A stretch of 63,743 nucleotides of DNA, the filler included, from Octopus bimaculoides (taxonomy: Eukaryota): NCBI RefSeq assembly GCF_001194135.2. It is 5 parts of 4 records of this genome, joined end to end, with 100 filler letters (N's around TTAATTAATTAA, not from the genome) between each part and the next. Parts side by side here need not be neighbours in the genome. Positions count along the whole stretch, not along the records: positions 15,971 to 33,776 come from NC_068983.1; 4 more parts are not named here. One strand, written 5' to 3'. The notes below the pieces were generated by a model. That model was not told where the DNA came from. It did no database searches and saw only the letters and a program-made list of their open reading frames with translations. A program made the translations under genes and the position numbers. Numbering within the stretch: the first letter of the stretch is position 1; every line of letters starts with the position of its first letter. Of the stretch, positions 21,840-26,282 are shown one piece after another.

Positions 21840-21995
21840 GAGATTTACATCGAAGATGTGAACAATGCTTGGAAGGTTATTCAGTCTTGGTTAGAGACAT
21901 CCACGGAGTGGACAATTAAAGCTGGACAGAATCCTATTGATGGGTGTGTGAGGAGTCACTGGTCAGATATATACGGCTGTGTAACCCTTTTACAA
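21840..21995 (+). CDS. Internal coding exon (phase 0-0, 52 codons) of an unrecognised gene: EIYIEDVNNAWKVIQSWLETSTEWTIKAGQNPIDGCVRSHWSDIYGCVTLLQ
   Basis: Acceptor ...atgctactctttaacacAG|GAG at 21839/21840 and consensus donor CAA|GTGAGT at 21995/21996. Length is 156 nt (divisible by 3) with no stops. Sequence is non-repetitive and protein-like. Confidence 0.8.
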
Positions 21996-22114
21996 GTGAG
22001 TATTTATTTAAACTATTTGAGGGTCGAATGGTATTGGTTGGTTTAGTTGTAAGGCATGGGTTGCCGCTTCGTTTCTACATAAAATATTTTAGAATATTTC
22101 TAGGGAAATTAAGG

Positions 22115-22330
22115 CGCTGAGCTGGCAGGATCGTTACCGTGCCGAACAAAATGCTTAGCATCATTTCGTCCGTCTTTAAGTTCTGAGTCAAATGCTGCTG
22201 AGGCCGATATTACCTTTCAGCCTTTCTAGGTCGATAAAATAAGTACCAGCTGGACCCTAGAATGAATGTAATTGACTTGCACCCTCCTCCGAACTTGATA
22301 GGCTTGTGTCAAGATTTGAAACCAATATTG
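22115..22330 (+). mobile_element. SINE family C copy in the gene intron
   Basis: Same head (gagctggcag), core and tail. Other copies: 29725-29885, 40855-41000, 41013-41225 and 51305-51450 (+); 400-490, 27215-27335, 45915-46087 and 58135-58320 (-). Confidence 0.8.
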
Positions 22331-22992
22331 TTAGGTAATTTAATTTTACGTTGATTCAGTTTGAGGTATGGATGCGTGAGATAAGGAGTCCTCTTAGTAA
22401 TCACGTGGTTCATTGCTCGATCTCAATGAATTGCATTTTTAGGTATATCTCTTCAACTATAGATTAGATATCTTGTGAGGGAAATTTGATTGAAATTGCA
22501 CAGGAGTACGACACACAAGGATGTGCACATAAATATATACATGTAAGAAGATACGCAACTATGTAAAACTAAGAATTGTAAGGAACTCAATGTATGGAAG
22601 TAGGCTATATATTTTATTTTAAGCTATGATTGCAGACATTCTAGTAATCAGCTTAATAAATGAGATTGATTTGTATGTACATATAACGGTACAATCAACA
22701 AAATACCGTTGCATAAACTCTTTAATAATACATAAATATTTGTTGTAATCACATCATCTGTACAATACCTATATATATATATATGTGTGTATGTATGTAT
22801 ATAAACATATACATGTATATATGTAAGAATCTCTCTCTCACGGATTCTCTCCCTTTGAGGGAAATTTCTAACCCCCCACTTTATTTCTTAGCAAACCATA
22901 TTTCTCTCTGCCTCTTTAGCTAAAAACAATCGTAGATGGCAGCAACGGCGGTCTCCAGTCAAATTTCACTCGTGTGTATATTTATATATATA

Positions 22993-23232
22993 CTAGCTGG
23001 CCCCGTGCCGTCAGAAATGACGGTTAATTGTAGTAGTATTTTATATATAAATAAGGTGCATAATAATCACACATACATTCACATACCTCCCTTTTAACAT
23101 ACACACATACACAGAGTTGAAACGCTGTTTGACTTTTTTCACCCCTTCCTTCCTTATTCATCTAGCACTCCTTCCTTTCTCATTGATATGTTGTGACGGA
23201 GAAAGACACTAGAGTATTATTATAGTAAAAGA
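22993..23232 (-). mobile_element. Complete 240-bp non-autonomous Helitron
   Basis: Minus strand: A|TCTTTTACTATAA 5' end, hairpin CCGTCA-TTTC-TGACGG (23008-23023), 11 nt, then CTAG|T 3' end. Inserted in an AT dinucleotide with no TSD. Confidence 0.8.
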
Positions 23233-23863
23233 TATACGGAAGTGTGAGGCTAAATGTGTAGGGTGTTGCACTCATTGTTGTAAAATTATGGCTTCGATTC
23301 CTGAACTGGGCGATGTGTTCTGTTTATTTTACATTGTTCCAGTTCACTCAGCTGGCGAAATTGAATAATCCTGCGAAGGACCTCCCTCCCATCCACTGAG
23401 GAATACATAGGCCAGAGAGTCTGGGAAACTGGCTTTAGGAACCTCTGGCTTGGAAAGGATCTTCAGTCGCTTTTGAAATATNNNNNNNNNNNNNNNNNNN
23501 NNNNNNNNNNNNNNNNNNNNNNNNNNNNNNNNNNNNNNNNNNNNNNNNNNNNNNNNNNNNNNNNNNNNNNNNNNNNNNNNNNNNNNNNNNNNNNNNNNNN
23601 NNNNNNNNNNNNNNNNNNNNNNNNNNNNNNNNNNNNNNNNNNNNNNNNNNNNNNNNNNNNNNNNNNNNNNNNNNNNNNNNNNNNNNNNNNNNNNNNNNNN
23701 NNNNNNNNNNNNNNNNNNNNNNNNNNNNNNNNNNNNNNNNNNNNNNNNNNNNNNNNNNNNNNNNNNNNNNNNNNNNNNNNNNNNNNNNNNNNNNNNNNNN
23801 NNNNNNNNNNNNNNNNNNNNNNNNNNNNNNNNNNACACACACACACACACACACATTTATATC

Positions 23864-23903
<40 letters not shown>

Positions 23904-25329
23904 CATGTACGTAGTTACACACACAGACGGCAAAAATACCGAATTTCTATTCACGTTAAATGAAGAGTTATTTTGATTTTCTTCTAAGAACGTGATCAAT
24001 GTATTACTAGACTACACAATTTTAAGTTGTTAGGTAAATCAAAATATTTGTTGAAATATTTTGATTTATGCCGACAAAAAGACATCAGTTCTGAATGTTT
24101 GTTCAAAATGGAACTTTTATAGGAAAGTATATTTATTTTCACAGAGAAGCAAAGGTTACACCAATTCTTACTCGATTTATATAGTCTGGCTTTTAATATA
24201 TTTCACGCAATTTTGCAATCCTTAACATTGTTACTTTTTATAGCTCGTATATATTTGATAAAATACAGTCCAGTGATTTTTTTTTATTAAAAGAGAGATG
24301 CGATTAAATCGTCCTTTAAATTTATTTCAGTTAACCCAATATACACTGTGGACATTTTGTACAATAAACTATTAAGATTTTGAAAGATATGAATTATTTC
24401 GTGGATAATTTATGAGCTTAAGACCGTTGCACGAGAGGGAAATGTTAGATGTACAAGGTTGTTTCTGATTTCTGCTATCGATGTATGCTATACCTACTTC
24501 AAACTTATTCACATAGCTAAATTTTAAAACTTTTTTTCTAGCATTTCCTTTTGTGATATTTATGGTTCTTCGGGAAGTATCTAATACAAGAAATGCTTAG
24601 TAATACGCGTACACCCTCTAAAATTGAATGGTGCATTGAACCAAATAATTTTCGTCTTCTATTTTTACGCCTGAAAATTATCATTATTTTTATAATTAAT
24701 TCTATAATGAAGCTCAGTTTTATTGCTTTATTGTAATAAGGAGAAATATTATTGAAGGAATATCTTTTAAAGAAAATACTCGATAAAGGCGATTATTCAT
24801 TAGTCGTAAGATTTAAAGCTATTTGTTGAAACTGTAAGCTTTATGTTAAGTCTTCAAATGAAAAACTAAAAGAAATATGAGCTGGAAGATAATATTACTG
24901 TAGCTAAAAGGAGCCGAGAAAGGTGACACTATATATCTATTATGTTGTAGATTTCGTAGGATATGGAGTACAACGTAACTATGACTATGCCACTGATAAA
25001 GTGTGTGGATTGTGGGACTAAATATGTTGCAGTATCCAGCCTGGTATATCTGTATTTTGGACTAATATCTGTAGAGGGAGATTTTGCTCTATTTATCTAA
25101 GTAACATTTATTGTTATTGTGTGTCGTTTAGCATAAAGTCAGTCCTAATCAAACAAACGTATAATCAAGGATGTCCTAGCTGTGACCATCCCTTCTCTTT
25201 GTGTACGTAGGGTTAAATTATCTTATATGTCTTTCATGTTTTGAGATGTGTGATGACAATGTGAGTCTCTCATTGTATTGTTGTGTCTCAGTGGCTTTTT
25301 TCAAAACCTGGGTCTGAAGTAAGGGACAG

Positions 25330-25860
25330 TAAACCATGGCTTTTGAATGCCTTCTTAGACTAGTGAAGTTGAAGCCATTAGTGTTTTTGGTAAATTACGG
25401 GAAAGATATGAGTATGGAGAGAATTCCAGTCAGCCAACATTCTGGGAAGGAAGAACTGGATTTAGTGTTAAGAGAGAAGGCTGGCTATATGGACACCTGA
25501 GAGATGAAATAATGGAGGCTCAGACAATCCCAAAGAATAGAGCTCATTATAGTAGTGGCTGAAAAGGTTGGGGAGGAGACAGCTCATTTATGGGCCAGAG
25601 GCTGGAGTATGTTTTCTATGAGTGACCTTATGCTAATCAGTCGGATAATCCTTTTCTGACGTTGTTAAGTATTCCAAAAGTGAGAGCAATACTTCTTTTT
25701 TGGCTTTATAGAGTGCAAAAAATCTTCGGAGGATAAAGCTATTTTATAAACCTGAAGAGCAGGACCATTCATTGGGATTTAATCCCCACTATGTTGAGGT
25801 TGTGCTTCCGCCAGGAGAAATTCATGGTGATGGAAAGACTCTCAAAGTGTGAAGTAGATG
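25330..25860 (-). mobile_element. Old CR1/Jockey-group LINE 3' fragment, antisense within the gene intron
   Basis: Minus frames give FSWRKHNLNI (LSWxxHI-like), SILWDC, SSFP and DWNSL (LWNSLP-like). Many stops. Confidence 0.55.
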
Positions 25861-26117
25861 TACCAGTCAGTTACTAGTTTGGTGCAATAAATTCTATAAT
25901 AAATTAATTATGTAACCGACCTTCATAGTTATGGAAAGTGATAAATGTATAAAACAAATATACTTCTTGTTTTACACGGAAGTACTTAACTTCATTTACA
26001 CTTTAGCATGTGAATTAAATTTTGCTTGCAAATTTATACTGCCATTATTAAATTTAGTGTTGAGCAAGATCAAAATGTATGTTCGGGTTATTTAGAAACT
26101 TTTTTTCTATATTTAAG

Positions 26118-26213
26118 GCACGACTTGATCTGGGACCCACTGAACTTTTTGAAGATCTTGCTTTTAATATTGATGAACAATTGAAATGGAATACATTAGT
26201 TTCGGAATTCCAG
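26118..26213 (+). CDS. Coding exon (phase 0-0, 32 codons): ARLDLGPTELFEDLAFNIDEQLKWNTLVSEFQ
   Basis: Acceptor ttttttctatatttaAG|GCA and donor CAG|GTTCGT. 96 nt open and phase-compatible with the 21840-21995 exon (joined: ...TLLQARLDLG...). Confidence 0.72.
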
Positions 26214-26267
26214 GTTCGTTAAACCATTTTAGTTTCTGTCTATTATGATATTTTGTTTTCTTTTCAG

Positions 26268-26282
26268 AGGGCACTGGAATAG
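26268..26282 (+). CDS. Putative terminal coding exon: RALE*
   Basis: Strong polypyrimidine acceptor ttttgttttcttttcAG|AGG after a 54-nt intron (26214-26267), read in phase 0 as AGG GCA CTG GAA TAG. The intron is short; without splicing the frame ends QVR*. Confidence 0.5.
   Translation, partial: RALE

What the first reader, a model, noticed from the sequence alone, without database searches (positions are those of the whole stretch)
21840..26282. Spliced protein-coding gene end of unrecognised family, missed by the ORF track
Seen: three exons with canonical splice sites join in phase 0 to give EIYIEDVNNAWKVIQSWLETSTEWTIKAGQNPIDGCVRSHWSDIYGCVTLLQ-ARLDLGPTELFEDLAFNIDEQLKWNTLVSEFQ-RALE* (88 aa). 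I do not recognise the family. The first 18 residues loosely resemble the hydrophobic/W pattern of a BACK-domain helix (weak inference). No ATG exon was found, so upstream exons lie in gaps, are too short to call, or are outside the window. This is the only well-supported host coding sequence in 64 kb.
Basis: partly seen in the sequence, partly recalled or inferred. Interest (0 to 1): 0.7.

Follow-up and report, generated by a model that had tools for sequence, protein, structure and literature searches.

The report
Start of an octopus START-domain gene

Summary
Partly confirmed, and ordinary. Their 84 residues occur at 100% identity in RefSeq XP_052822749.1, [quoted passage not shown]. They are 78-80% identical to the O. 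sinensis protein and 65% (phmmer) to the Argonauta hians one. The piece is 100% identical to O. bimaculoides chromosome CM046603.1.

The family is known: START domain (PF01852). The nearest solved structures are human STARD3/MLN64, StAR and the silkworm carotenoid-binding protein.

The exons encode the N-terminal 40% of the domain, so this is the gene's 5' part, not its end. In all orthologues the protein continues after ...SEFQ with ILEKLSDE.... That exon lies 47 kb downstream, outside the piece. The third exon, "RALE*", is in no orthologue, and its acceptor is not conserved in Argonauta.

The assembly gap 23482-23834 lies inside intron 1 and touches no reading frame. The gap-free Argonauta locus has the same two exons in the same order, with the same Q|A junction.

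The BACK-domain idea is not supported.

The parts
18786..18833 (+). Annotated first coding exon, ATG...MDDIFSVNSSDSASVL, phase 0, donor CTC|GTAGGT
   Evidence: It matches residues 1-16 of XP_052822749.1 at 100%, and the annotated gene range starts here (L001 10001). It is supported only by the RefSeq model and a canonical donor. There is no DNA conservation with the Argonauta first exon, and O. sinensis uses a different N-terminus. This is the least certain part.
18834..21839 (+). Intron between the ATG exon and E1. It holds SINE copies and (CATA)n microsatellites.
21840..21995 (+). Coding exon E1 (52 codons, EIYIEDVNNAWK...GCVTLLQ). It encodes START helix alpha1, strands beta1-beta2 and most of beta3.
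   Evidence: tblastn: 6e-34 to P0010, 8e-29 to O. sinensis, 4e-15 to A. hians. It aligns without gaps and in frame with A. hians; differences by codon position are 15/11/29. Secondary structure comes from the AF2 model of the orthologue.
21996..26117 (+). Intron 1 (4.1 kb). It contains the assembly gap 23482-23834 and a SINE at 22096-22294.
   Evidence: The junction is proven by the contiguous TLLQ|ARLD in orthologous proteins.
26118..26213 (+). Coding exon E2 (32 codons, ARLDLGPTELFEDLAFNIDEQLKWNTLVSEFQ). It encodes the end of beta3, helices alpha2-alpha3 and the start of beta4. It holds the conserved W-N that aligns with STARD3 W310-N311.
   Evidence: tblastn: 7e-18 to P0010, 1e-15 to O. sinensis, 4e-10 to A. 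hians. The homologous exon in A. hians has the same borders and the same donor, G|GTTCGTTA. Differences by codon position are 11/4/14.
26214..33776 (+). First 7.5 kb of a ~47 kb intron; the next exon is outside the piece
   Evidence: The next exon, ILEKLSDEMD...KKIIR, lies at L001 64622-64807 (window-equivalent 73407-73592). No START-like hit lies between 26214 and 33776.
26268..26282 (+). It is not part of the conserved gene; at most a cryptic or alternative acceptor.
   Evidence: It is absent from all orthologous proteins. The acceptor and sequence are not conserved in A. hians. The acceptor itself is strong (13/15 pyrimidines + CAG). Only 19 such sites occur in 17 kb, so use at a low level cannot be excluded.

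Best explanation
The window piece is the 5' third of the Octopus bimaculoides gene annotated as 'stAR-related lipid transfer protein 3-like' (XP_052822749.1) on chromosome CM046603.1.

Three coding exons lie in the piece: the annotated ATG exon 18786-18833, E1 21840-21995 and E2 26118-26213. E1 and E2 encode the N-terminal ~40% of a START domain: helix alpha1, strands beta1-beta3 and helices alpha2-alpha3. The transcript then splices across a ~47 kb intron to the remaining START exons outside the piece.

The product is a small soluble protein with a START domain only. It has no MENTAL membrane domain. It belongs to the StAR/STARD3 (STARD1/3) subgroup.

By inference from that subgroup, it encloses one hydrophobic ligand in the helix-grip cavity and shuttles it between membranes or holds it in the cytosol. 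The ligand would be a sterol or a carotenoid such as lutein. The fold and family are shown here. The ligand and the cellular role are inferred.
For: Identity of the locus
- The piece is 100% identical to L001 7186-24991 of GCA_001194135.2 CM046603.1, gaps included.
- XP_052822749.1 contains the 84 aa at 100%, and its residues 1-100 map to the three exons.

Conservation
- Exhaustive phmmer gave E 1.4e-24 to A. hians, 9.8e-15 to a 266-aa START-only transcript, and 1.3e-4 to a MENTAL+START protein.
- The O. sinensis protein is 78-80% identical over E1 and E2.
- The exon borders are the same in the gap-free A. hians locus, which has a 31 kb intron after the E2 homologue.
- Substitutions fall mostly on the third codon position: 26/15/43 over the 84 codons.

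Family
- Pfam START scores 37.1 bits for the O. bimaculoides product, against a cut-off of 22. The orthologues score 77-88 bits over profile positions 13-205 of 207.
- By sequence, the best PDB matches are STARD3 5i9j at 1.2e-25, StAR 3p0l at 2.3e-20 and BmCBP 7ztq at 2.4e-17.
- The AF2 model of the O. sinensis orthologue has pLDDT 79.5. It matches 1em2/5i9j with TM 0.88 and rmsd 2.6 A.

Function by analogy
- Human STARD3 binds cholesterol and lutein. A scallop STARD3 homologue binds lutein (PMC8991518).
- Lophotrochozoans have several STARD1/3 homologues (PMC12350143).
Against: - The 84 aa alone give no Pfam or PDB hit. Family assignment therefore rests on the full-length orthologues.
- The O. 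bimaculoides RefSeq model is itself incomplete: 170 aa with an odd C-terminus. One START exon (GNNGPGGWIL...) could not be found in L001, which holds 14 kb of N. An intact full-length gene in this species is therefore not proven.
- The ATG exon has no cross-species support.
- No expression data could be consulted.
- The ligand is unknown. STARD3 Asp332, which partners Arg351, is Tyr here, and Met307 is Gln. This comes from the alignment, with numbering from my own knowledge of STARD3.
Confidence: 0.9

Rival explanations
1. One reading: the gene ends here. The donor at 26213 splices over a 54-nt intron to 26268 and the protein terminates ...SEFQRALE*. This could be the only form or an alternative short isoform.
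For: The acceptor at 26268 is unusually good (13/15 pyrimidines + CAG). Only 19 sites of that quality occur in 17 kb. The join is in phase 0.
Against: All orthologues continue with I/V-L/V-E-K-[LI]S... straight after the E2 homologue. That exon exists 47 kb downstream in the same species. The acceptor region is not conserved in A. hians. A START domain cut after alpha3 cannot form the ligand cavity. Four codons and a stop carry no coding information. No AATAAA or ATTAAA signal was printed by the scan of 26283-27500.
Confidence: 0.07
2. The O. bimaculoides copy is a decaying pseudogene of the STARD3-like gene. The intact-looking exons are remnants.
For: The current RefSeq product is truncated at 170 aa. 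One internal START exon was not found. The last exon lies outside the annotated gene range.
Against: Every exon found is open and free of frameshifts. They are 78-94% identical to O. sinensis at the protein level, and the last exon is 94%. Canonical splice sites are kept. The missing exon is readily explained by the five N runs in L001 between the ILEKL exon and the last exon, out of 14 kb of N in the locus.
Confidence: 0.05
3. The open frames and splice-like sites are chance features of AT-rich intergenic DNA.
For: About three open frames of 100 codons or more are expected by chance in a piece of this size and composition (my estimate). Many are seen in the microsatellites.
Against: E-values of 1e-24 and 1e-14 against 1.84 billion proteins. 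In-frame, gap-free conservation with Argonauta.
Confidence: 0.01

Closest known systems
Human STARD3 / MLN64 START domain (PDB 1em2, 5i9j)
   Same: It is the best sequence match (1.2e-25) and the best structural match (TM 0.88) of the orthologue. It has the same helix-grip START fold. W-N (STARD3 W310-N311), RDF and R351 are conserved.
   Different: The octopus protein has no MENTAL transmembrane domain (PF10457 is absent) and no evident FFAT motif. It cannot be an endosome-ER tether like STARD3. Asp332 is Tyr and Met307 is Gln.
Vertebrate StAR (STARD1, PDB 3p0l)
   Same: It has a single START domain after a short N-terminal extension, and a similar size. Sequence match 2.3e-20; TM 0.87.
   Different: StAR and STARD3 arose by a chordate-specific duplication (PMC12350143), so this is not a StAR orthologue. 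The octopod N-termini are acidic (DDEDEDTTETEE in O. sinensis), unlike a basic mitochondrial presequence. That judgement is by inspection.
Bombyx mori carotenoid-binding protein (BmCBP, PDB 7ztq)
   Same: It is an invertebrate soluble START-only protein of the STARD1/3 group. Sequence match 2.4e-17; TM 0.71-0.75. The architecture is the most similar.
   Different: In my own knowledge, BmCBP is a product of the silkworm Start1 (STARD3-type) locus. The octopod gene is a separate locus, with no MENTAL exons in the models. The ligand is not known here.
Molluscan STARD3 homologues (e.g. Chlamys nobilis StAR-like-3; the 444-aa P0005)
   Same: They belong to the same START subgroup. The scallop protein binds lutein (PMC8991518).
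   Different: Those proteins carry MENTAL + START (PMC8991518; for P0005). They are only ~28% identical to the window peptide.

Membership tests
START domain (Pfam PF01852) | Score above the Pfam gathering threshold | tested here: met
   The annotated product that includes the window's exons scores 37.1 bits against a cut-off of 22, over residues 35-162 and profile positions 16-145. The orthologues score 77-88 bits over nearly the whole profile. The 84 aa alone give no hit.
START domain (Pfam PF01852) | Helix-grip fold: an N-terminal helix, a curved antiparallel sheet and a long C-terminal helix closing a hydrophobic cavity | tested here: met
   AF2 model of the O. sinensis orthologue: pLDDT 79.5; order of elements helix, three strands, two helices, seven strands, two C-terminal helices. 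Foldseek TM 0.88 to 1em2/5i9j. This was tested on the orthologue, not on the O. bimaculoides protein.
START domain (Pfam PF01852) | A complete domain (~210 aa) is encoded at this locus | tested here: inconclusive
   Exons for ~180 of ~210 residues were found in L001. The ~30-residue exon GNNGPGGWIL...SSMQM was not found. The locus holds 14 kb of N.
START domain (Pfam PF01852) | Binds a lipid in the cavity | not testable with these tools
   This needs recombinant protein and binding assays.
STARD3 / MLN64 proper | N-terminal MENTAL domain (PF10457) with four transmembrane helices | tested here: not met
   There is no MENTAL hit in P0010, P0011, P0012, P0001 or P0002. The positive control P0005 scores 191.8 bits.
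STARD3 / MLN64 proper | FFAT motif between MENTAL and START, for VAP binding | not tested
   No motif scan was run. None is evident by eye in the short N-termini.
StAR (STARD1) | Orthology to the chordate StAR clade and an N-terminal mitochondrial presequence | tested here: not met
   The best matches are STARD3 rather than StAR. The StAR/STARD3 split is chordate-specific (PMC12350143). The N-termini are acidic (by inspection). No targeting predictor was available.
   There is no BACK hit at E<=10 for the peptide, nor at E<=0.01 for the full proteins. The residues in question form START helix alpha1.

The most novel reading that the evidence does not exclude
The octopod gene is a lineage-restricted, MENTAL-less paralogue of the STARD1/3 group. 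It was found only in Octopus and Argonauta, plus one unassigned transcript. It may have become, independently of vertebrate StAR and of silkworm CBP, a soluble carrier for a particular sterol or carotenoid. The changed cavity residues (Asp332 to Tyr, Met307 to Gln) could go with a different ligand.
Probability: 0.3. Interest if true: 0.35.

Novelty: already known. Interest (0 to 1): 0.1.

Why it matters
It matters little beyond annotation hygiene. The finding is a correct manual rediscovery of two exons of an annotated gene of a textbook family.

The useful by-products are these:
- The current O. bimaculoides RefSeq model is truncated. A conserved last exon lies about 9 kb beyond the annotated gene end.
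- An older model was fused to the tail of a LINE open reading frame.
- Octopods carry a START-only STARD1/3-like gene. Its ligand (sterol or carotenoid) is untested. This touches the open debate on sterol handling in molluscs (PMC12350143).

Tried and rejected
- Pfam and PDB phmmer with the 84/88-aa peptide gave nothing.
- The k-mer protein search with the 84 aa also gave nothing, although the database holds a protein with the peptide at 100%. A null from that tool is therefore not evidence.
- tblastn with StAR, STARD3, STARD4 and STARD5 sequences written from memory found nothing. The similarity is too low for BLAST on single exons.
- I looked for the remaining START exons in the piece downstream of E2. 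By eye there were two faint resemblances: 'IVEDITKLD' at about 26279-26305 in another frame, and 'RVFVFVTTKT' at about 26463-26492. Neither gave a tblastn hit at E<30. They are not colinear with the real exon, and the real exon exists 47 kb away. I rejected both as chance.
- Rfam found no RNA family in the piece.
- The O. sinensis 5' exons (MSGEQQ...SLKDK) were not found in L001 at E<1.
- The O. sinensis locus could not be fetched because the gene spans 133 kb. An AAA-ATPase gene overlaps the 5' end of the O. sinensis gene on the other strand. A Walker-A scan found no trace of it in the piece or in L001.
- The ATG exon shows no DNA-level homology to the Argonauta first exon.
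Full report
**Observation.**
- Exon E1 is 21840-21995. It is preceded by ...ctctttaacacAG and followed by GTGAGT.
- Exon E2 is 26118-26213. It is preceded by ...tttctatatttaAG and followed by GTTCGT.
- The two join in phase 0 to give the 84 residues EIYIEDVNNAWK...NTLVSEFQ.
- The proposed third exon, 26268-26282 (AGG GCA CTG GAA TAG), follows a 54-nt intron and a strong polypyrimidine/CAG acceptor.

**The gap.** N runs in the piece are at 23482-23834, 30277-30460 and 32567-32773. 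The first lies entirely within the intron between E1 and E2, so no reading frame crosses it. Two results show that the two sides belong together in this order and orientation.
- The orthologous proteins read ...TLLQ|ARLD... without interruption.
- In the gap-free Argonauta hians locus, the two homologous exons sit 7.7 kb apart on the same strand.

**Is it more than chance?** An open frame of about 100 codons is not in itself remarkable in this AT-rich, microsatellite-laden DNA. Homology settles the matter.
- Pfam, PDB and the word-indexed protein search found nothing with the short peptide.
- The exhaustive phmmer search of 1.84 billion representatives gave two strong hits. One is a 225-aa protein at E 1.4e-24 and 65% identity. 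The other is a 266-aa protein at E 9.8e-15.
- It also gave a weaker hit to a 444-aa protein.
- In all three, the query aligns near the N-terminus of a domain that continues for about 130 more residues.

**What it is.** Searching with the best hit returned named relatives:
- 'stAR-related lipid transfer protein 3-like' of Argonauta hians (GAB1599822.1);
- the same in Octopus sinensis (XP_036356809.1 and XP_029634157.1);
- the same in Octopus bimaculoides (XP_052822749.1, 170 aa).

The O. bimaculoides protein contains the 84 residues at 100% identity. Its genomic locus is L001, from GCA_001194135.2 chromosome CM046603.1 positions 131507499-131586033. The window piece is 100% identical to L001 7186-24991, with the same gaps. 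Window coordinate = L001 coordinate + 8785. The gene is therefore already annotated.

**Gene structure.** tblastn of the models on L001 gives these exons:
- an ATG exon MDDIFSVNSSDSASVL at window 18786-18833, with donor CTC|GTAGGT;
- E1;
- E2;
- ILEKLSDEMD...KKIIR at L001 64622-64807, with acceptor ttttgtAG and donor CGG|GTAAGC;
- the last exon GNLPQKLIDQLSPRVMLSYLQPLRKHINDLSKRKS* at L001 77571-77679.

The intron after E2 is thus about 47 kb, and only its first 7.5 kb is in the piece.

The Argonauta gene has seven coding exons, with the junctions Q|A and E|V at the same places. Its donor after the E2 homologue is the same, G|GTTCGTTA, and the intron there is 31 kb.

Over the 84 codons, octopus and Argonauta align in frame without gaps. 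They differ at 26, 15 and 43 first, second and third codon positions. Outside the exons, identity falls close to the level of shuffled sequence.

**The third exon.** 'RALE*' is not present in any of the five cephalopod models, from three species. All of them, including the O. bimaculoides ones, continue with [IV][LV]EK[LI]S.... The acceptor region is not conserved in Argonauta. A START domain cut at that point would lack the whole sheet and the C-terminal helix.

The acceptor is, however, one of only 19 sites of its quality in 17 kb. I cannot exclude occasional cryptic or alternative use, and I put that at about 7%. The claim 'gene end' is wrong: the piece holds the gene's beginning.

**Family and mechanism.**
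- Pfam START (PF01852) is hit by the O. bimaculoides product at 37.1 bits, against a cut-off of 22. The full-length orthologues score 77-88 bits over profile positions 13-205 of 207.
- None of them has a MENTAL domain. The distant 444-aa hit has MENTAL + START, like canonical STARD3.
- By sequence, the nearest solved structures are human STARD3 (1.2e-25), StAR (2.3e-20), the silkworm carotenoid-binding protein (2.4e-17), then STARD5/4/6.
- An AlphaFold model of the O. sinensis orthologue has pLDDT 79.5 and pTM 0.76. It has the START helix-grip topology and superposes on 1em2/5i9j with TM 0.88 and rmsd 2.6 A.
- Mapped on that model, E1 encodes helix alpha1, beta1, beta2 and most of beta3. E2 encodes the end of beta3, alpha2, alpha3 and the start of beta4.
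- In the alignment to 5i9j (numbering from my own knowledge of STARD3), W310-N311, R-D-F and Arg351 are conserved. Met307 is Gln and Asp332 is Tyr.

The most likely mechanism is inferred from the family. The protein is soluble and encloses one sterol or carotenoid molecule, which it moves between membranes or keeps in solution. Human STARD3 binds cholesterol and lutein, and a scallop homologue binds lutein (PMC8991518). StAR and STARD3 are a chordate duplication, and lophotrochozoans have several co-orthologues (PMC12350143). The name 'STARD3-like' is therefore a subgroup label, not orthology. By architecture the protein is closest to silkworm CBP or to StAR without its presequence.

**Novelty.** The gene is already known: it is an annotated gene of a textbook family. 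The only mildly open points are the ligand and the phylogenetic age of this MENTAL-less paralogue. The searches here found it only in octopods, plus one unassigned RNA-seq contig, SRR27666087. Those searches are limited by word-sharing.

**Caveats.**
- No expression data could be consulted.
- The ATG exon rests on the RefSeq model alone.
- One internal START exon of the O. bimaculoides gene was not found, probably because of the N runs in the locus.
- Part of the family assignment (fold, full domain) was tested on orthologues rather than on the incomplete O. bimaculoides product.

Noticed in passing
L001 64622-64807 and 77571-77679 (outside the window; window-equivalent 73407-73592 and 86356-86464): RefSeq XP_052822749.1 (170 aa) is truncated, ending in 'FYIFTIHS'. 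A conserved last START exon, 94% identical to O. sinensis and with its own stop, lies about 9 kb beyond the annotated gene end (L001 68535). The exon for GNNGPGGWIL...SSMQM was not found and is probably in an assembly gap.
   Followed up: partly
window 16787-17760 (+), especially 17550-17699: This is a degraded LINE. It has a reverse-transcriptase fragment with YADD (Pfam RVT_1 at 20.5 bits, below the cut-off) followed by a C-terminal tail ORF. The older RefSeq model XP_014767656.1 used that tail (MYCSSLEFKD...PISR) as the first exon of the START gene. It also read E1 upstream to 21768. That model was a TE-gene chimera.
   Followed up: partly
L002 13029-13064 (Argonauta hians): The 36 nt upstream of the annotated Argonauta acceptor are in frame and preceded by cAG. 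They are homologous to the 5' part of octopus E1 (EHFTKIVNDAW versus EIYIEDVNNAW). The octopus-type acceptor is probably also usable in Argonauta, so the annotated isoform may be one of two.
   Followed up: partly
window 18887-19310, 22096-22294, 29730-29892: There are five copies of a ~200-nt SINE-like repeat (GGCAGTGAGCTGGCAG...GTTCTGAGTTCAAATTCCGCCGAGGTCGACTTTGCCTT...), all in introns of the gene. ARAGORN was not run on them, and Rfam found no hit at gathering threshold.
   Followed up: no
window 16120-16700, 20700-21340, 23835-23930, 27600-27770, 30180-30276, 31400-31800, 32180-32566, 32774-32860: Long (CATA)n, (CA)n, (TA)n and (CT)n microsatellite tracts produce most of the long 'ORFs' in the piece. 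They border every assembly gap, which suggests the gaps are unresolved repeats.
   Followed up: no
tool behaviour: The word-indexed protein search with the 84-aa peptide returned nothing. Yet the same database holds XP_052822749.1, which contains the peptide at 100%. Only the exhaustive HMMER search opened the case.
   Followed up: no
O. sinensis locus (no DNA fetched): In O. sinensis an AAA-ATPase gene (554 aa, PF00004 + PF17862) on the opposite strand overlaps the first ~15 kb of the 133-kb STARD3-like gene. A Walker-A scan found no counterpart in the window piece or in L001.
   Followed up: partly
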